Below, one piece after another: positions 4,362 through 56,167 of a DNA stretch of 64,000 nucleotides. Every line of letters starts with the position of its first letter. Positions within the stretch are counted from its first letter, which is position 1. The notes beneath the pieces are model-generated. The model saw only the letters and a program-made list of their open reading frames with translations, searched no databases and was not told the DNA's origin. A program made the translations under genes and the position numbers. The stretch covers positions 186,001-250,000 of IMG/VR virus record IMGVR_UViG_3300031669_000001; one strand, 5' to 3'.

Positions 4362-7163
4362 TTACTCCTCGTCAAAATTCAGTAGCTTGTTAACAACTAC
4401 CGTGTGTTCAGTTGGGACTTCCCAACCAATCGGTTCAAAGATGTTGCTGATCTTCTTGTCGATCAACTTTAACTCTGTGAGTCGAACATCAATCTCAAAA
4501 TTGTCAGTGAACCACTTTGGCAGTTCTTCTGTGTCAGAGTCGAACGCCATGCTTTTGAAGTCGTGTTCATTCTTCTTGAGCCACACGATCTTAATCTTTG
4601 ATCCAGAGATTATCTGACGAGTGTTCTGATCACCAAACATCTCAATGCATAAGTTATGGTTGATTGCTGGACGGACGTTGCCTGGAAGCTTTGCGTTTCC
4701 AAATCCAGGCTTCTCGATGCGCAACCACTTCTCATAGTAGTCTTCAAGGTTCTTGACAGAGGTTGTTGTCGCATAATCCAACGGCTTGACGTCATCCTTG
4801 TTGAAGTTTCTGCGGAATTCTATGATCTCATCATTGATCTTCTTCTTCGGTTTTTCTGTCAAGACATCCAACAGAACCTTCTTCAGCATTGTACGAATAG
4901 CTTCTGGAGTTGAGGAGATCTTGATGTCACTACCTTGAGACTTGAGCGCCTTCTTGTCATCGACGTCAATCTTAACTCCTTCAATGTCCTTCGCCAACAG
5001 GATGTACTTCTTCTTGGCGCTGAAGATACCTGCCGAAGCTACAATTTCACGGTTTGCCTTGATGAGAGTATCAAAACCTGGCTGACAGAAGAAGGCTTCA
5101 CGAACGAATGGTGCAAAGGATTCATTGACAGCCGCAGCGATCGCGTCAGCGCATTGAATTGCATCCTCGACGTTATCTTTGACTAGCTGTTCCATCACGA
5201 AGTAACAGCTATCAGTATCAGAGTAGATAGGACCGATGCCATGTGGAACATCCAACGTGTAAGCATTTTCAAATTCTCGCTTGCTGTTTTTAGTTTGCTT
5301 TGCCTTCGTTACTGTCTTGACAAGCTTAGGAGCACCTTCACCCATCAGATTGACCGCTACGGTATTGATCATGTGCGTGGTGATTTGACGACCAGAACCT
5401 GTTGTCGATGCACCAAGTCTTGGATCGTGGAACCTACAGAATTCATTCAAGGTTGCACCGTAAGTAGAGTTCAACAGAACTTTACGAACACCTTGCAACA
5501 TGTCGTAATACTCTGAAAGATCGCTGAGCCTTATGTACTCAGGATCTGTCTTGTCACCACAGACTTCCAGCCTTTCTGCAGCCATCTTGGCGTGCTTCTT
5601 CTTGAGGCCTTGCAGTTCCTTACGACCGTTGAACCAGTAGGTCAAGACCGCTGGGATAAGTCCTTCACCATTACCTTGATCAAGGATGGTGCCGTAAGCT
5701 GTAAGAGCGTACTTGTTATCCTTCAGGAAGTTGATCATATTTCCAGCGGTGATCTGAAGACCTGCATCTACAGGTTCTCCATCCTCGTCTAGAGGGTTGG
5801 TTCCTTCTGGAATGATCGTCACAGTTGCGTTCTGGGCTTCTTCATCCTCAGGGTGGAGGTTTGCGTAGTAGACTCTCTTCCAACCTTCCTCATACTCTTC
5901 AAGCTGTCCAACGATCTTTTCAGGTGACAGGTTTAACGTCCGGTACGTACTGGGGTACAGGGATGCCAAGTCAATAGATCCTATCATCTTGTGCAAGCCG
6001 ATCTTCGGTGTCATCACCAGAGCACCCTCTACGTACGATGAAGGCTTATGTGTCTTATCAAAGACAATTTCATTGCGGATTGAATGACTAAAGTTTATGA
6101 TAGCTGTATCGATCAGCTGCACCGAACCAAAGATGGCGGAGAAGTTTACCGTCGCCTCATGGACCATGGTGTTGGCAAGCTGAATGTACTTGAACTTCTT
6201 GTCGAGATCCAAGATACAGGTAACGTCGTGTCTATTGTACTTTAGGAAGTGGATGAAGTCATTGCGGTAGAGCTCGTAGAGGGTGCCTTCATAGTGCAGC
6301 TTAGGGACGTCTAACTCTTCTTCAGTGATAGCTGCTAGAGAGAATGATTGACGACCACCGAGGGTGAATTTCTTGAAGAGACCCATGTAATCGAGGTGGA
6401 CTCTGCTGAGAAGATCGATGACGATTTCCTTTTCCTTCGAACCCTTGAAGCGAAACTTTTCACCCCATCTAGGAGTAGGACCACCTTCAAAAGCTAGGTG
6501 GCGAAGTGCATGCTTACCAAATAAAAGTTCGATCCTCTTCGCGATGTACGGCATATCAAAGAATTCAGAGTTCCAACCTGACAGAATATCAATGTCTTGA
6601 ATGAGATCAATGAACGTTTGTAGAAGCTCTCGCTCACTGTTAAACAACCAATAGTTGTCATCGTGCATATCTTGAGGAAGAAGCGCACTTATTGGAATTC
6701 CAGCTTCCTTAGCGTTATTGATCCAGGTTTCTGGAGGAAGAGCTAAAGTGAAGTATGCTTTGACGGCGGTGTTGTAGACCGTGATCGCATTGATAGGCGC
6801 ATAGGGATTTGAGGCTCTAGGCCAACCAATTGCTGGATCGTAATCAACTTCTATATCCAAGAATCCGACTGAAACTACTGGGATCTTCTTCCCAAAGTAG
6901 CTCATCATAACCTTCTCTTGAGGGTGAAGATCGCTCTCGAATCGCTTTGGATGAGAACGACAGCCTGCGTCAAACTCACTTCTAGAGCTGAACTCCAGAA
7001 GCTTTAGCTTTTCACCTGTGATCGCCTTGAATGTTCCTTCTTCATCAGGAACGTAGAAATTGTATGGACTGTCGTATTCGCGCAGGTTGCGCTTGCCTGA
7101 TTCGGTCTTTTCCCAAACGAGAACCTTATCACGCCCACGTTCGTGGTATGAGGATATAAACAA
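4362..7163 (-). CDS. family B DNA polymerase (gp43-like), TTG start
   Basis: Exo motifs DIEVD, GWN..FD, YN..D; polymerase motifs DLASLYPS, K..LNS.YG, YSDTDS, KKKY. Confidence 0.97.
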   Translation of the reverse strand: MFISSYHERGRDKVLVWEKTESGKRNLREYDSPYNFYVPDEEGTFKAITGEKLKLLEFSSRSEFDAGCRSHPKRFESDLHPQEKVMMSYFGKKIPVVSVGFLDIEVDYDPAIGWPRASNPYAPINAITVYNTAVKAYFTLALPPETWINNAKEAGIPISALLPQDMHDDNYWLFNSERELLQTFIDLIQDIDILSGWNSEFFDMPYIAKRIELLFGKHALRHLAFEGGPTPRWGEKFRFKGSKEKEIVIDLLSRVHLDYMGLFKKFTLGGRQSFSLAAITEEELDVPKLHYEGTLYELYRNDFIHFLKYNRHDVTCILDLDKKFKYIQLANTMVHEATVNFSAIFGSVQLIDTAIINFSHSIRNEIVFDKTHKPSSYVEGALVMTPKIGLHKMIGSIDLASLYPSTYRTLNLSPEKIVGQLEEYEEGWKRVYYANLHPEDEEAQNATVTIIPEGTNPLDEDGEPVDAGLQITAGNMINFLKDNKYALTAYGTILDQGNGEGLIPAVLTYWFNGRKELQGLKKKHAKMAAERLEVCGDKTDPEYIRLSDLSEYYDMLQGVRKVLLNSTYGATLNEFCRFHDPRLGASTTGSGRQITTHMINTVAVNLMGEGAPKLVKTVTKAKQTKNSKREFENAYTLDVPHGIGPIYSDTDSCYFVMEQLVKDNVEDAIQCADAIAAAVNESFAPFVREAFFCQPGFDTLIKANREIVASAGIFSAKKKYILLAKDIEGVKIDVDDKKALKSQGSDIKISSTPEAIRTMLKKVLLDVLTEKPKKKINDEIIEFRRNFNKDDVKPLDYATTTSVKNLEDYYEKWLRIEKPGFGNAKLPGNVRPAINHNLCIEMFGDQNTRQIISGSKIKIVWLKKNEHDFKSMAFDSDTEELPKWFTDNFEIDVRLTELKLIDKKISNIFEPIGWEVPTEHTVVVNKLLNFDEE

Positions 7164-16916: not shown

Positions 16917-16992
16917 TGGTCGCCCTGGAGGGATTCGAACCCTCGATCGCGATTTTAGAGATCGCAGCTTTACCGCTAAGCATTACAAGGCG
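16917..16992 (-). tRNA. amber suppressor tRNA (anticodon CTA)
   Basis: Acceptor CGCCTTG/CAGGGCG-A-CCA, anticodon arm GCGAT-CTCTAAA-ATCGC, T arm GAGGG-TTCGAAT-CCCTC. Confidence 0.88.
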
Positions 16993-40058: not shown

Positions 40059-40247
40059 ACATTCATTTGTGTTCTGGTCGTAACTCCAGCAGCTGATATT
40101 AGCCTCAATCTCCTGTTCCACGCTTCCAGCTTGCAAACCTTTCACGCTTCGACCTCAGAGGCACATGCCATGTTCTATAACGCTTCATTCGCGACTTCCA
40201 CGTTACGTCAGCCAGACATTCGATAACTTGCACTTGCTACACAAATT

Positions 40248-41704: not shown

Positions 41705-41716
41705 ACAACGATTGAA

Positions 41717-41787
41717 CGACATACGGGGAATCGAACCCGCGATCTCCGGCGTGAAGGCCAGGGTTTTGTCCGTTAAACTACACATCT
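41717..41787 (-). tRNA. Glu-like tRNA with a 6-nt anticodon loop (CTTCAC), no CCA
   Basis: D and T arms intact; stem CTGGC/GCCGG. Confidence 0.5.
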
Positions 41788-41870
41788 CAGATCTTTTTTC
41801 AAAACTTGCTGGAATCGATTAAAATCTGTCAATCGTGATCATATCCACGGCAGCAACCGCTTCAATAATT

Positions 41871-44723: not shown

Positions 44724-44918
44724 ATGAATGTAGCCTAAGCACCGACAGATAGGTTGCGATCCTACCCTGTTGCTCGAGTATGACACTGTCGTGGCATTCT
44801 CTTCTTCACAAGAGACCTCAGTTGTGACTTACGATCTCTTGATCATCTACATTGAGACTTCGTTACACTCGTACACCGAGCAATGACCGACGAGATAAAC
44901 TCGACGATCACCGAAGTC

Positions 44919-44992
44919 TGGCGGGCCAGAGGGGTGTCGAACCCCCGCGTGAAAATAGACAGTTTTCCATACTACCGTTATATGACTGACCC
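44919..44992 (-). tRNA. tRNA-Asp(GTC)
   Basis: Loop CTGTCTA, G73, CCA. Confidence 0.83.
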
Positions 44993-49051: not shown

Positions 49052-49141
49052 TGACTCTTGTCGTCTGTCTAGGGCTTCTAATGACTCTTGTCGTCTGTCT
49101 AGGGCTTCTAATGACCCTTGTCGTCTGTCTAGGGCTTCTAA
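49052..49141. repeat. 3 x 30-bp tandem repeat inside a small minus-strand ORF (49046-49153; LEALDRRQES repeats)
   Basis: TGACTCTTGTCGTCTGTCTAGGGCTTCTAA x3 with one mismatch. Confidence 0.92.
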
Positions 49142-53721: not shown

Positions 53722-53910
53722 TTAGATGAGGGTGGAAGCCTTGTAGCCCATGCTGTTCCACAGGATACGAGTCTTGCCGGCCGAGGTTGTTTGTTGTGCA
53801 CGAACTGTTACTTTCGAAGTGCGCTTTTGGATTGCTGTTTTGCCTTCGCGATAAACGCGAGTTCCTGCAGCGATCGAGATTTTCTTACCTACGAGATTTG
53901 TCTTTGACAT
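53722..53910 (-). CDS. small basic protein
   Basis: SD, 62 aa. Confidence 0.6.
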   Translation of the reverse strand: MSKTNLVGKKISIAAGTRVYREGKTAIQKRTSKVTVRAQQTTSAGKTRILWNSMGYKASTLI

Positions 53911-53970
53911 AATGAATTTCCTTATGAGTATGTTATGAAAAGAGGAATCAAATGATTCCTCGTTTGCTAC

Positions 53971-54174
53971 TTAAACAGCTTGGATATTGGAAGCTTGTGC
54001 TCCCTTTTGTCCTTGAGTCACGTCAAAGGAAACCTTCTGGCCTTCTTTGAGAGATTTGAAACCGCTCATGTTGATCGCAGAGAAGTGTGCGAACAAATCG
54101 TCACTACCTACATCTGGGGTAATGAAGCCAAAACCTTTAGCGTCATTGAACCACTTTACTGTACCTGTTGCCAT
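53971..54174 (-). CDS. cspA: cold-shock protein
   Basis: [21 protein letters not shown]. Confidence 0.96.
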
Positions 54175-54227
54175 TCTTATTTCTTTCTAAATTGAACAAT
54201 CACCGAAATTGATGATTGGGTAAAACA

Positions 54228-54568
54228 ATAAACTAGAGATGAGGGCAGATTATGCTCTTACCAAGCCTTTCGGCCGTCTTCCCTTTCGGGGTCGACATGG
54301 TAGCTTGAATTAACCATCCTCAAGCTTAGGACCACCTAACCGCACATGATCGGACATGCGCAACCAGCATGTTAAGCACCTAGTTTAGTCCAGGCTACGA
54401 CCCAGTTTATCGTCTGGGAACTATTCTGTGATCACCACAGACAGTGGGTAAACTATTTTCACACTCTTGCTTGGTTAGGTCGAGTGCTATCTTAAAGTTG
54501 CCCTTAAGAAGTAGTTCCATCAGCTTCACAAGTTGTCGAAGTATCACAATCTAATGCAGCTAGTTTAT
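54228..54568 (-). ncRNA. Y-RNA-like handle family, copy 4 (about 280-nt structured payload)
   Basis: ATAAACTA-GCTGCATTAGATTGT-GATACTTCG...ATAATCT-GCCCTCATCTC-TAGTTTAT. Confidence 0.7.
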
Positions 54569-54640
54569 CGGTAGCAGCAGGTGGAGTCGAACCACCGGAG
54601 ATAGGCTTATGAGACCTATTTGAATCCCATTCTCACTGCA
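54569..54640 (-). tRNA. tRNA(CAT), miniature D arm
   Basis: Loop CTCATAA, T arm intact. Confidence 0.6.
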
Positions 54641-54641
54641 A

Positions 54642-54766
54642 CATTGATGAGAAAAAGTTGATAGAGGCTTTTTGTGGCGGCTGTCCTACCACTGGACGAC
54701 TAGTCAGGAATCGAACCTGAGTTCGCTGCTTTGGGCGAAGTAACTCTTATCTACGCAACATCAATG
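54642..54766 (-). ncRNA. Y-RNA-like handle family, copy 5 (T arm then D arm)
   Basis: CATTGAT-GTTGCGTAG...GTTACTTCG, TCAGG-TTCGATT-CCTGA, GTCC-AGTGGTA-GGAC, TTTTTCTC-ATCAATG. Confidence 0.78.
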
Positions 54767-54916
54767 GTGCCATACAATCAGAGTCAACCAACTGCATGAC
54801 ATTTCAGCATTTTACCGGAGCTACCCGGCTTTCCTTCGAGGATCTTTAATACCGCCCTTTCGGGTGATGGTACAAGAATTGCTGAACCCCTAGTGGAAGT
54901 GCCCTTCCACACCGTT

Positions 54917-54990
54917 TGGAGCGGGTAGAGGGAATCGAACCCTCCACTGAACCTTGGCAAGGTTCCGAGTTACCACTACACCACACCCGC
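54917..54990 (-). tRNA. tRNA-Gly(GCC)
   Basis: Loop TTGCCAA, CCA. Confidence 0.88.
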
Positions 54991-55105
54991 TAGATGAACA
55001 TTCAAAGAATGTCATCCGTCTCCACCATCTAATGATCAGCTCCACTAGAAGAGTTACCACCTAAGGTACCATCCAATGATCGGCTCCATTGGAAGAGTTA
55101 TAAGT

Positions 55106-55236
55106 TGAATCGAGAAAGAGGCGAAAAGAGAGATTTTAGGGTTTTGCCATTAAACTATACCCACTAGGGGCAGCCGGAATCGAACCGACGTCACTCGTTT
55201 AAGAGACGAAGTAACTCTTTTCTGTGCAACGATTCA
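55106..55236 (-). ncRNA. Y-RNA-like handle family, copy 6 (T-acceptor-D module)
   Basis: GTCGG-TTCGATT-CCGGC, TGCCC/GGGTA, TA, GTTT-AATGGCA-AAAC inside the handle. Confidence 0.8.
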
Positions 55237-55311
55237 GGTGCGGGATGAGAGAATCGAACTCTACTATTCCTGGGTGGAAGCCAGGCGTGTAACCAATGAC
55301 ACCTATCACGC
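55236..55311 (-). tRNA. tRNA-Gly(TCC)
   Basis: Loop CTTCCAC. Confidence 0.75.
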
Positions 55312-55316
55312 AAAGG

Positions 55317-55402
55317 GATGGAGAAAAAGTCGGTAAGGGAGACTGGCCGAAGCCAAGGTTAACAAAAAGTAAACGAAGTAGCCCTAATCCTATGCAACCA
55401 TC
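55317..55402 (-). ncRNA. Y-RNA-like handle family, copy 7
   Basis: GATG-GTTGCATAG...GCTACTTCG...TTTTTCTC-CATC. Confidence 0.72.
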
Positions 55403-55403
55403 T

Positions 55404-55477
55404 TGGAGCGGGTGAAGAGAATCGAACTCTCGTCATAAGTTTGGAAAACTTCAGCTCTACCATTGAGCTACACCCGC
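55404..55477 (-). tRNA. tRNA-Gly(TCC)
   Basis: Loop TTTCCAA, CCA. Confidence 0.88.
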
Positions 55478-55579
55478 GTTGCTTTACTGCAATTTCAGCC
55501 ATAATAACATAACTTTCTGAGAAAGTACAATATTATTTGCAGCGGTAATTATTTATGACTGGGCAATTTTTATGAAAAG

Positions 55580-56167
55580 TTAAGTTTTTCTACTTGTATT
55601 CGCATTCATAATCCATTGATAGTTGAAGTCAAAGTCATCTTGATCTCCGACTGTAGCCATCTCTCCACTAGGAAGAAACTTCCCGATAACGAGAACATCA
55701 CCAGCATCTACCTTGTTCAAGAGACGGTACAGTCTCTTGTTTGCGCCAGACGCATTAGCGTAATCACCTTCAACCTGACCATAAAGGTCGGCATTATACT
55801 TTTCAGAGATGAATTTTGCAACAGCTGCAGAACGACTTACCCCTGCATGACAATGAACTATAACCCGCTCACACGTTATCCTATTCAAAAAATCTATGAT
55901 TGCTTTTGCATGATTTGCATCAGGCAGGCGTAGGTTGTGCCACAGAACTGGACCATCAGGGTCAGCGTCAGGGACGGCACCCAAAGGTTCATGAATAGTT
56001 TCTTCTTCCAGATCATCAAAGCTCAGCCTTAGGATCGAGAAAAAGCCATCATTTATCAAGGCTTTAGGATCTCCAGGGGAAGTAATTGAGATTATAGCGG
56101 TGTCAGAGCGTACAACTTCTCGATGTTCCATCCAACGCTGACTAACGAATTTAACGGTTTTGATCAT
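55580..56167 (-). CDS. protein tyrosine/dual-specificity phosphatase family
   Basis: VHCHAGVSRS (CX5R), F.D. Confidence 0.88.
   Translation of the reverse strand: MIKTVKFVSQRWMEHREVVRSDTAIISITSPGDPKALINDGFFSILRLSFDDLEEETIHEPLGAVPDADPDGPVLWHNLRLPDANHAKAIIDFLNRITCERVIVHCHAGVSRSAAVAKFISEKYNADLYGQVEGDYANASGANKRLYRLLNKVDAGDVLVIGKFLPSGEMATVGDQDDFDFNYQWIMNANTSRKT

What the first reader, a model, noticed from the sequence alone, without database searches (positions are those of the whole stretch)
54228..54568. 341-nt handle RNA with a large multi-helix insert upstream of cspA
Seen: the same handle encloses many hairpins (CCCAGACGATAAACTGGG, TCTGTG-GTGAT-CACAGA, GCGCATGT/ATGTGCG, and GAAA-capped CCC-GAAA-GGG and GGCC-GAAA-GGCT), with no ORF. 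Inference: an unknown large structured RNA, possibly a scaffold or ribozyme-like domain.
Basis: partly seen in the sequence, partly recalled or inferred. Interest (0 to 1): 0.6.

Follow-up and report, generated by a model that had tools for sequence, protein, structure and literature searches.

The report
Conserved structured RNA before phage cspA
A 345-base, many-helix RNA domain sits between a tRNA-like gene and the cold-shock gene cspA of an uncultured 345-kb phage; its fold is kept in related phages, it appears in RNA libraries, it matches no catalogued RNA family, and its function is still unknown.

Summary
On the minus strand, window 54570-54226, an 11-bp terminal helix (P1) and a 9-bp helix (P2) close about ten hairpins, and no ORF is conserved. 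I found five further distinct versions (55-98% identical) in related uncultured jumbo phages. The consensus fold has 32 pairs with compensatory changes, against 12.8 +/- 3.5 in column shuffles, and it favours the minus strand. Every copy starts 3-4 nt after a tRNA-type acceptor/T-arm helix (...NCC-G|AUAAACU). Two metatranscriptomes give contigs that run from cspA up to about 54550 and have a hole over the tRNA-like gene. One chimeric contig places a 5' end at 54568. One relative keeps only P1 as a plain hairpin before cspA. Another has a homing endonuclease gene between the element and cspA. Rfam gives nothing except a sub-threshold cspA hit driven by the coding sequence. Two motif scans of 185,579 prokaryote species found no copy. 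Best reading (0.5): a leader domain of the cspA transcript, released by tRNA excision and clamped by P1. Main rival (0.3): a stand-alone stable RNA that ends at the terminator-like hairpin 54218-54197. I found no evidence for a ribozyme.

The parts
54570..54640 (-). Upstream tRNA-Met-like gene (CAU anticodon loop, aberrant D arm). Its T arm and acceptor 3' strand end in ...A-CC and run straight into the element.
   Evidence: ARAGORN. Rfam tRNA scores only 24.8 bits, below the gathering score of 29. Acceptor-stem pairs are compensated in G001 (read directly). There is no RNA contig over it in X2 or X4.
54568..54571 (-). Junction CCG|A between the tRNA-type helix and the element. This is the inferred processing site and the 5' end of the element RNA.
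   Evidence...NCC-G then (A/G)UAAACU follows a T-arm/acceptor helix in all six versions and in the insert-less L153. The chimeric contig L159 joins foreign RNA exactly at 54568.
54560..54570 (-). P1 5' strand, CGAUAAACUAG (the 'handle').
   Evidence: It pairs with 54236-54226. Double changes keep the pairs in G001 (A-U to G-C), L154 (A-U to G-C) and L153 (G-C to A-U). P1 closes the MFE fold of all six versions.
54554..54559 (-). Conserved internal-loop strand CUGCAU between P1 and P2 (GCUGC is invariant).
   Evidence: Alignment A4.
54545..54553 (-). P2 5' strand, UAGAUUGUG.
   Evidence: It pairs with 54254-54246. Five of the nine pairs show compensatory double changes in at least one version, and the helix is a perfect 9 bp in the most distant version, L154.
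54535..54545 (-). GAUACUUCGA(C); the first ten bases are identical in all six versions.
   Evidence: Alignment A4. Its partner or role is not resolved.
54490..54509 (-). Hairpin capped by a GNRA tetraloop (GCAA here).
   Evidence: The loop is GCAA or GAAA in 6 of 6 versions and the stem covaries.
54462..54486 (-). Variable hairpin (peripheral).
   Evidence: A hairpin is present in each version but the sequence is not alignable.
54425..54441 (-). Hairpin UCUGUG-GUGAU-CACAGA.
   Evidence: L166 has UCCAUG/CAUGGA and L154 has UCCAUU/AAUGGA, giving compensatory changes at three positions.
54401..54418 (-). Hairpin CCCAG-ACGAUAAA-CUGGG. It contains an internal copy of the P1 5' strand.
   Evidence: Present in W, L157 and L166, replaced by other hairpins in L148 and L154, and absent in G001. 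It can pair with the P1 3' strand in an alternative fold of nearly equal energy. That alternative is not supported by covariation.
54379..54394 (-). Hairpin CCUGG-ACUAAA-CUAGG.
   Evidence: Kept in 5 of 6 versions.
54354..54372 (-). Hairpin CAUGC/GCAUG.
   Evidence: Kept in 5 of 6 versions, with G-C to G-U changes.
54340..54353 (-). Hairpin CCG-loop-CGG.
   Evidence: L157 (98% identical overall) and L154 have CCA/UGG, a double change.
54324..54341 (-). Conserved joining strand GGUUA..(U)GG.CCUAAGC; CCUAAGC is invariant.
   Evidence: Alignment A4. This was the motif used for the scans.
54303..54325 (-). Hairpin CUUGA/UCAAG with the conserved loop GGAUGGUUAAU.
   Evidence: GGUUAA is invariant. 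The stem has double changes in G001, L166, L148 and L154.
54259..54302 (-). Three-way junction UACCA/UGGUA that holds the two GAAA-capped hairpins.
   Evidence: The closing stem covaries (UACCG/CGGUA in G001, UACUGA/UCAGUA in L148). The inner hairpins vary in number and in loop.
54246..54254 (-). P2 3' strand, CAUAAUCUG.
   Evidence: See the P2 5' strand.
54237..54245 (-). Conserved internal-loop strand CCCUCAUCU (consensus AYYUYAUCU).
   Evidence: Alignment A4.
54226..54236 (-). P1 3' strand, CUAGUUUAUUG.
   Evidence: See the P1 5' strand.
54219..54225 (-). Linker UUUUACC. UUACC is kept in every version, including G001 and the insert-less L153.
54197..54218 (-). Hairpin 2 (CAAUCAUC-AAUUUC-GGUGAUUG) followed by a U-rich tail. 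It looks like a terminator.
   Evidence: Found by the terminator scan. Five of its eight pairs show compensatory double changes in at least one version. It is absent in G001, where the homing endonuclease ORF was inserted.
53971..54174 (-). cspA CDS (67 aa). The Shine-Dalgarno-like AGAAAG lies at 54188-54183.
   Evidence: ORF list, phrog_729 cold shock protein at E 1.8e-23, coordinates.
53942..53961 (-). Strong intrinsic terminator after cspA.
   Evidence: It also matches the terminator of the Rfam cspA model.

Best explanation
The element is a self-contained folded RNA domain at the 5' end of the phage cspA transcript. It is transcribed as the tail of a tRNA operon. Excision of the adjoining tRNA-type acceptor/T-arm helix (by host RNase P, RNase Z or RNase E, with the phage CCA-adding enzyme finishing the tRNA end) leaves an RNA that begins flush with helix P1. 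P1 and P2 clamp the 5' and 3' ends of a 320-nt multi-hairpin core, so no single-stranded 5' end is exposed. The likely effects are protection of the transcript and a folded platform just upstream of a terminator-like hairpin, the ribosome-binding site and cspA. What is shown: the fold and its covariation, the constant tRNA-helix junction, presence in RNA libraries contiguous with cspA, and a hole over the tRNA-like gene. What is inferred: the enzymes that make the cut, the stabilising role, and any sensing or control of read-through at hairpin 2.
For: Fold and covariation. Junction: all six versions, plus the insert-less L153, start 3-4 nt after a T-arm/acceptor helix. In G001 and L154 only a minihelix, not a full tRNA, sits there. 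In five of six versions the element is followed at fixed spacing by the linker UUUUACC, the covarying hairpin 2, a Shine-Dalgarno-like sequence and the cspA ATG. Only about 20 nt lie between hairpin 2 and the ATG, and the promoter scan found no more sites than chance. RNA libraries: X2 has a contig over 53776-54549 that ends in an Illumina adapter. X4, from another study and a 92%-identical relative, has a contig over 54002-54551. Both have zero depth over 54565-54635. Contig L159 runs from 54568 to 53471 and is joined there to other tRNA-flank pieces. The insert-less relatives keep the tRNA-like helix, the P1 hairpin, hairpin 2 and cspA; six contigs carry that cspA and the four whose DNA could be fetched, from four different samples, show this arrangement identically. 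The phage encodes a CCA-adding enzyme. From established knowledge: base-paired 5' ends protect E. coli mRNAs from RNase E, and bacterial cspA mRNAs carry long structured leaders.
Against: Hairpin 2 with its U-rich tail looks like a terminator, which would make the element a separate RNA. In G001 a homing endonuclease gene lies between the element and cspA, and hairpin 2 is gone, yet the element is kept with compensatory changes. L153-type phages express cspA without the insert, so cspA does not need it. Predicted accessibility of the Shine-Dalgarno site and AUG hardly changes between 10 and 37 C, so there is no sign of a thermosensor. All RNA evidence comes from contigs, which cannot show strand, level or single molecules, and DNA carry-over is not excluded. 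About ten conserved helices is more than a stabiliser needs.
Confidence: 0.5

Rival explanations
1. It is a stand-alone stable non-coding RNA of about 380 nt. It is cut out of the tRNA operon at its 5' end and ends at hairpin 2, and it acts in trans, for example by binding a protein, serving as a decoy or assembling with itself. In this reading cspA is made only by read-through.
For: Hairpin 2 is terminator-like, conserved and covarying. The element is kept in G001 although it is separated from cspA. It is dispensable for cspA in L153-type phages. It has many conserved helices plus invariant unpaired motifs. It lies in a tRNA cluster of a phage, as described for GOLLD and ROOL RNAs (PMC5737381), and, from my own knowledge, for the T4 stable RNAs.
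Against: RNA contigs run across hairpin 2 into cspA in two libraries and in L159. No room or signal for a separate cspA promoter was found. The U-tract is interrupted in W, L157 and L148. The strict adjacency to cspA in five of six versions is then left unexplained.
Confidence: 0.3
2. It is a riboswitch-like or factor-sensing attenuator. The folded core binds a ligand, a tRNA or CspA itself, and formation of P1 decides whether hairpin 2 terminates transcription before cspA.
For: It has the architecture of an aptamer closed by P1, followed by a linker, a terminator-like hairpin and the gene. W has an alternative fold of nearly equal energy in which the P1 3' strand pairs with an internal copy of the 5' strand (-120.5 against -119.0 kcal/mol). 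From established knowledge, CspA proteins melt terminator hairpins.
Against: The alternative pairing is not supported by covariation: in L154 P1 changed but the internal copy did not, and G001 and L148 lack the long internal copy. No conserved antiterminator was found. There is no match to any riboswitch or to the T-box. The same G001 and L153 arguments apply as above.
Confidence: 0.1
3. It is a ribozyme: either self-cleaving at its own 5' boundary, or a relic or active self-splicing intron inserted into the loop of the P1 hairpin.
For: It is large and ornate, with GNRA loops and an invariant CCUAAG that resembles half of a tetraloop receptor. The insert-less P1 hairpin in L153 looks like an empty site. 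A discrete 5' end lies at the base of P1.
Against: There is no match to group I or II introns, HDV-like, hammerhead, twister, hatchet or pistol models at E up to 10. No joint skips the element in any run (table 5). The UAUGG strand that would partner CCUAAG is absent. There is no U-G or terminal-G splice-site pattern. The constant tRNA-type helix gives a simpler explanation for the 5' end.
Confidence: 0.05
4. It has no function of its own and is decayed tRNA genes or spacer that happens to fold.
For: It lies in a tRNA array that is rich in tRNA-like debris. Its 5' part resembles the 5' part of neighbouring tRNA-like sequences (UAGAU..GAUACUUCG).
Against: It has 32 compensatory pairs against 12.8 in shuffles, invariant motifs persist at 55% overall identity, and the module boundaries are respected by two independent gene insertions in G001.
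Confidence: 0.03

Closest known systems
cspA mRNA leader / thermoregulator of enterobacteria (Rfam RF01766)
   Same: Both are long structured RNA directly upstream of a cspA gene on the same transcript.
   Different: The Rfam model scores 55 bits against a gathering score of 78, and the score comes from the coding sequence and the terminator. The leader part aligns poorly, and in the homologs the hit covers different amounts of the element, or none. The phage leader is more than twice as long, is closed by a long-range helix, starts at a tRNA junction, and shows no predicted temperature-dependent exposure of the start site.
GOLLD and ROOL RNAs (large ornate RNAs of phages and prophages, often next to tRNAs; PMC5737381)
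   Same: All are large multi-helix non-coding RNAs in a phage genome beside tRNA genes, with unknown function.
   Different: There is no Rfam match. This element is smaller (298-424 nt against about 580-800), is tied to cspA, and has been found only in one small phage clade.
tRNA punctuation: mitochondrial transcripts, MALAT1-mascRNA, and the stable RNAs of the T4 tRNA cluster (from my own knowledge)
   Same: The end of a longer RNA is defined by excision of an adjoining tRNA or tRNA-like helix. Here even a bare acceptor/T-arm minihelix serves (G001, L154).
   Different: In this element the tRNA-like helix defines the 5' end of a downstream structured leader or mRNA. The cleavage has not been shown biochemically.
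5'-terminal stem-loop stabilisers of bacterial mRNAs (ompA type; from my own knowledge)
   Same: A helix starts at, or within a base or two of, the processed 5' end. The insert-less relative has just such a plain hairpin.
   Different: Here the hairpin loop holds a conserved 320-nt folded domain, far more than protection requires.

Membership tests
Rfam cspA thermoregulator (RF01766) | The covariance-model score reaches the curated gathering score (78 bits) and the leader helices align. | tested here: not met
   The window scores 55.0 bits and the homologs 45-58 bits. The high-confidence part of the alignment is the coding sequence and terminator, and overlap with the element is inconsistent.
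tmRNA (standard and permuted) | A tRNA-like domain formed by the two ends, plus a tag reading frame and pseudoknots, detectable by ARAGORN or Rfam. | tested here: not met
   ARAGORN finds no tmRNA. Rfam tmRNA models give only fragments of 17-18 nt elsewhere.
RNase P RNA | Conserved regions CR-I to CR-V with the P4 helix, and a match to an Rfam RNase P model. | tested here: not met
   There is no RNase P hit at E up to 10 in the window or up to 5 in the homologs. The GGAAAGUCC-type motif is absent from the sequence.
Group I / group II introns | A conserved catalytic core (P3-P9, or domains I-VI) with exon junctions, and spliced products. | tested here: not met
   There is no Rfam intron hit. 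No joint skips 54226-54570 in four runs.
Small self-cleaving ribozymes (HDV-like, hammerhead, twister, pistol, hatchet) | A match to the family model, and cleavage without protein. | tested here: not met
   There is no Rfam hit. Cleavage itself cannot be tested here.
GOLLD / ROOL / HEARO / OLE / raiA large RNAs | A match to the family covariance model. | tested here: not met
   None is listed at the gathering score or at E up to 10.
T-box and other riboswitch leaders | A known aptamer or T-box sequence, plus mutually exclusive terminator and antiterminator helices. | tested here: not met
   There is no Rfam hit. A terminator-like hairpin is present, but I found no conserved antiterminator. The one alternative pairing lacks covariation.
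tRNA-punctuated RNA (end defined by excision of a tRNA-like helix) | An acceptor/T-arm helix directly abuts the RNA in all homologs. | tested here: met
   Seven of seven locus types meet this, including two with only a minihelix.
tRNA-punctuated RNA (end defined by excision of a tRNA-like helix) | RNA ends map to the junction. | tested here: inconclusive
   RNA contigs stop at 54549-54551 and are absent over the tRNA-like gene. The chimeric contig junction lies at 54568. Only contigs were available, not raw reads or 5'-end mapping.
5'-terminal stem-loop mRNA stabiliser | The helix starts at the 5' end and lengthens mRNA half-life. | not testable with these tools
   The geometry fits (P1 starts at 54570 and the inferred end is 54568-54571), but half-life has to be measured.

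The most novel reading that the evidence does not exclude
This is a new class of large phage RNA (298-424 nt) with a sophisticated function of its own. It could be a sensor of tRNA or another ligand that gates cspA, a protein-binding decoy against a host nuclease or defence system, or a catalytic or self-assembling RNA. It would be delivered by a tRNA-excision mechanism that also works with a bare acceptor/T-arm minihelix.
Probability: 0.25. Interest if true: 0.8.

Novelty: new variant of a known kind. Interest (0 to 1): 0.6.

Why it matters
Large, intricately folded RNAs are rare in bacteria and phages, and those whose function has been worked out have often turned out to do unusual chemistry or regulation. 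This one has a clean natural data set. There are six diverged versions with compensatory changes. One relative keeps only the closing hairpin. Another has genes inserted on both sides that mark the module's borders. The RNA is present in environmental transcriptomes. It also suggests that jumbo phages with big tRNA arrays use tRNA excision, even of minimal tRNA-like helices, to set the ends of other RNAs, including the messenger for an RNA chaperone. If the domain senses something or protects the transcript, it would show how a phage controls a cold-shock protein during infection. If it acts in trans, it joins GOLLD and ROOL as tRNA-linked phage RNAs of unknown role.

Tried and rejected
- **Rfam:** I searched at the gathering score over the whole window, at E up to 10 over 53900-55600, and at E up to 5 over four homologous loci. 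Only tRNAs, weak YrlA-like hits on neighbouring tRNA-like sequences and the sub-threshold cspA model came up.
- **GenBank phages:** blastn matched only the cspA coding part. The nearest named relative, Ralstonia phage RsoM2USA, has no match to the element.
- **Viral contigs:** All eight scan slots were used: six DNA patterns and two protein look-ups. Only G001 is a true homolog, and the rest were chance matches. The last pattern mostly hit Walker-A-like coding DNA.
- **Metagenome pattern scan:** This gave one new homolog (L166) and seven chance hits.
- **Genome contigs:** The 3' motif gave 0 hits and the 5' motif gave 11 chance hits, none confirmed by nhmmer.
- **Other copies in the phage genome:** There are none.
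- **Coding:** Rejected, because the frames are not conserved.
- **Thermosensor:** There is no temperature-dependent change in start-site accessibility.
- **Conformational switch through the internal copies of the handle:** This is energetically possible in W but not supported by covariation.
- **Long-range helix between GAUACUUCGAC and GGUUAGGUGG, proposed by one alifold run:** It is not kept in G001 or L148.
- **Resemblances noticed by eye and dropped:** The E. coli cspA 'upstream box' GCCGAAAGGC is present only in W and L157. A tmRNA 3'-region look-alike, a T-box UGGN look-alike and a CCUAAG tetraloop receptor (no UAUGG partner) were also dropped.
- **Not done:** I did not build a covariance model, because a full-length model exceeds the calibration limit and the P1 and P2 pairs cannot be kept in a partial one. 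I did not use the count of structure pairs, because it would have needed a very long typed structure string. I ran equivalent shuffle and slide controls in a script instead.

Full report
**Where it lies.** The window is bases 186001-250000 of a 345,069-bp virus record with direct terminal repeats, rated complete. The phage has a T4-type DNA polymerase, a CCA-adding enzyme and a cold-shock protein. It carries about 40 tRNA genes, all on the minus strand. Its nearest named relative is Ralstonia phage RsoM2USA, with only 43% polymerase identity. The finding is the 395-nt gap between a tRNA-Met-like gene (54570-54640, minus; ARAGORN; Rfam tRNA only 24.8 bits) and the cspA coding sequence (54174-53971, minus).

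**Observation.** The 9-nt arms are the only exact copies of that word in the window, and the word is not enriched. The single-sequence fold is moderately better than shuffles on both strands (z -3.2 and -2.8). On its own the sequence is therefore suggestive but no more. The element is single-copy in the phage genome, and no reading frame is conserved.

**Homologs.** DNA searches of GenBank phages matched only the cspA coding part. A related 135-kb IMG/VR contig, G001, has 71% polymerase identity and carries the element. I then followed a conserved 97-aa neighbour protein and exact cspA products through public assemblies, and ran one metagenome pattern scan. This gave five further distinct versions besides the window (W):
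- L157 (identical to L158), 98% identical to W
- L166, 77%
- G001, 62%
- L148 (seen in several samples), 66%
- L154 (AT-rich, 424 nt), 55%

A 92%-identical variant is also visible in run X4. Two motif scans of one genome for each of 185,579 prokaryote species found no copy. The eight viral-contig scan slots (six DNA patterns and two protein look-ups) yielded only G001.

**Structure.**
- With two sequences, RNAalifold already gave 69 pairs, 11 of them compensated.
- With six sequences it gave 67 pairs, 26 of them with double changes.
- With RIBOSUM scoring it gave 90 pairs, 32 of them compensated. Sixty column shuffles gave 12.8 +/- 3.5 compensated pairs (maximum 20), and structures slid by 1-3 columns gave 3-12.
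- The consensus energy is -116.7 kcal/mol against -66.1 +/- 4.6 in the shuffles.
- The minus-strand fold beats its reverse complement, -102.4 against -83.1.

The solid parts are these:
- P1 (11 bp) and P2 (9 bp; five positions compensated, and a perfect helix in the most distant version).
- A hairpin with a GNRA loop in 6 of 6 versions.
- Five further hairpins with covariation.
- A three-way junction whose closing stem covaries.

Invariant unpaired motifs are GCUGC, GAUACUUCGA, CCUAAGC and GGUUAA. The region between the GAUACUUCGA motif and the GNRA hairpin, and possible long-range contacts such as GGAACUA with UAGUUCC, remain unresolved.

**The 5' border.** In every version the element begins 3-4 nt after a tRNA-type T arm plus acceptor 3' strand, in the form ...N-CC-G then (A/G)UAAACU.
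- In W, L157, L148 and L166, ARAGORN calls a tRNA-Met there.
- In G001 and L154 only an acceptor/T-arm minihelix is present.
- In G001 the full tRNA-Met-like gene lies 0.45 kb upstream, beyond an inserted 122-aa ORF.

The constant partner is therefore the minimal substrate of tRNA end-processing enzymes. That these enzymes make the cut is my inference.

The RNA data agree with this.
- In soil metatranscriptome X2 a contig covers 53776-54549 and ends in an Illumina adapter.
- In a salt-marsh metatranscriptome (X4, another study) a 92%-identical contig covers 54002-54551.
- Both runs have zero depth over 54565-54635, although the flanks are covered.
- A JGI contig (L159) joins minus-strand pieces 40099-40063 and 44919-44855 to 54568-53471.
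- Its second piece starts right after the CCA of tRNA-Asp.
- The junctions therefore look like ligated natural RNA ends, and they place a 5' end at 54568.

All of this comes from contigs. Strand, abundance and single-molecule continuity are not shown, and DNA carry-over cannot be excluded, although the hole over the tRNA argues for RNA.

**The 3' side.** After P1 comes an almost invariant linker (UUUUACC). Next is hairpin 2 (54218-54197), which covaries and is followed by a U-rich tail; the simple scan flags it as terminator-like. About 20 nt further on lie a Shine-Dalgarno-like sequence and the cspA start. The promoter scan found no more sites than chance. The RNA contigs cross hairpin 2 into cspA.

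**Natural variants.** Two natural variants act like experiments.
1. L153-type phages keep the tRNA-like helix, a plain P1 hairpin (GAUAAACUAA-AGUU-UUAGUUUAC, with a compensated closing pair), hairpin 2 and cspA, but have no insert. Six contigs carry that cspA. The four whose DNA could be fetched come from four different samples and are identical over this region.
2. In G001 a homing endonuclease gene (phrog_314, E 2e-15) sits between the linker and cspA, and hairpin 2 has decayed. The element is nevertheless kept, with compensatory changes.

Together these show that P1 is the basal feature of the locus. The 320-nt core is a separable module whose borders are respected by insertions on both sides. 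cspA does not strictly need the module, and the module does not strictly need to touch cspA.

**Known families.** Rfam gives no match at E up to 10 for tmRNA, RNase P, introns, small ribozymes, riboswitches, the T-box, or the large RNAs GOLLD, ROOL, HEARO, OLE and raiA. The only overlapping hit is the cspA thermoregulator model. It is below threshold (45-58 against 78 bits), is driven by the coding sequence and terminator, and overlaps the element inconsistently. Folding at 10, 25 and 37 C shows no change in start-site exposure.

**Mechanism.** I favour a tRNA-punctuated, P1-clamped leader domain of the cspA transcript (0.5). The main rival is a stand-alone stable RNA ending at hairpin 2, with cspA made by read-through (0.3). 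Less likely are a ligand- or factor-sensing attenuator (0.1), a ribozyme or intron relic (0.05), and non-functional debris (0.03). W has an alternative fold of nearly equal energy, in which the P1 3' strand pairs with an internal copy of the 5' strand. Covariation does not support it.

**Novelty.** The family is undescribed. Its general kinds are known: structured cspA leaders, large phage RNAs beside tRNAs (PMC5737381), and ends set by excision of tRNA-like helices. I therefore rate it a new variant of a known kind. There is a real chance (about 0.25) that the core has a sophisticated function of its own.

Noticed in passing
window 54641-54800 and 55140-55236 (minus strand); L166 838-887; L154 1773-1884: These are tRNA-like sequences that ARAGORN does not call. 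They share the 5' part GUUGCRYAGAWAAGAGUUACUUCG and a normal T arm, and they give weak Rfam YrlA (Y RNA-like) hits of 24-31 bits. Their 5' part resembles the 5' part of the element (UAGAU..GAUACUUCG).
   Followed up: partly
window 55195-55312: Metatranscriptome X2 has a contig that joins 55312 to 55195, skipping 116 nt: tRNA-Gly(tcc) plus the 5' half of a tRNA-like sequence. The joint is not seen in the DNA run. One side lies exactly 1 nt upstream of the tRNA 5' end. It could be RNA ligation of processed ends or a strain deletion.
   Followed up: partly
L159 (same as L169) 1-101; window 40063-40099 and 44855-44919: This contig is a three-part chimera of minus-strand tRNA-flank pieces joined to the element at 54568. 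The middle piece starts right after the CCA of tRNA-Asp and is itself a 65-nt RNA closed by the stem GACUUCG/CGAAGUC. It is a second 'tRNA followed by a closed structure' unit.
   Followed up: partly
window ~54787 (minus); L148 ~738; L011 ~4150-4125 (minus): A conserved motif of about 25 nt, GTTGACTCTGAYT...G.ACCA, lies upstream of the tRNA-like cluster. In G001 it lies directly after the element, in front of the homing endonuclease ORF. It has a -35-like TTGACT but no consistent -10. Its role is unknown.
   Followed up: no
L011 3403-4101 and 4574-4942 (minus): G001 carries a homing endonuclease ORF (232 aa, phrog_314) and an unknown 122-aa ORF inserted on either side of the element.
   Followed up: yes
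window 16917-16992 and 41716-41789 (minus): One tRNA has a CTA anticodon (amber-suppressor type, labelled Pyl by ARAGORN), and another is called with an odd 2-nt anticodon.
   Followed up: no
L150 10914-11585; L151 13990-14664: Related phages carry a release-factor-like gene (PCRF/RF-1 domains) split into a 35-aa ORF and a 165-184-aa ORF. This is reminiscent of the frameshift in prfB.
   Followed up: no
window 49052-49141; 42372, 46872 and 48390: There are three tandem 30-nt repeats (two identical, the third 97%), and a 58-nt repeat family (74-97% identical) that contains AAGCATTATAACA. The latter may be a phage promoter or regulatory box.
   Followed up: no
window 54219-54225; L153 ~6575-6600: The linker UUACC(C/A) after P1 is universal. 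In the insert-less L153 the hairpin reads as a 7-bp stem followed by ACCA, which looks like a tRNA acceptor microhelix. I have no explanation for this.
   Followed up: no
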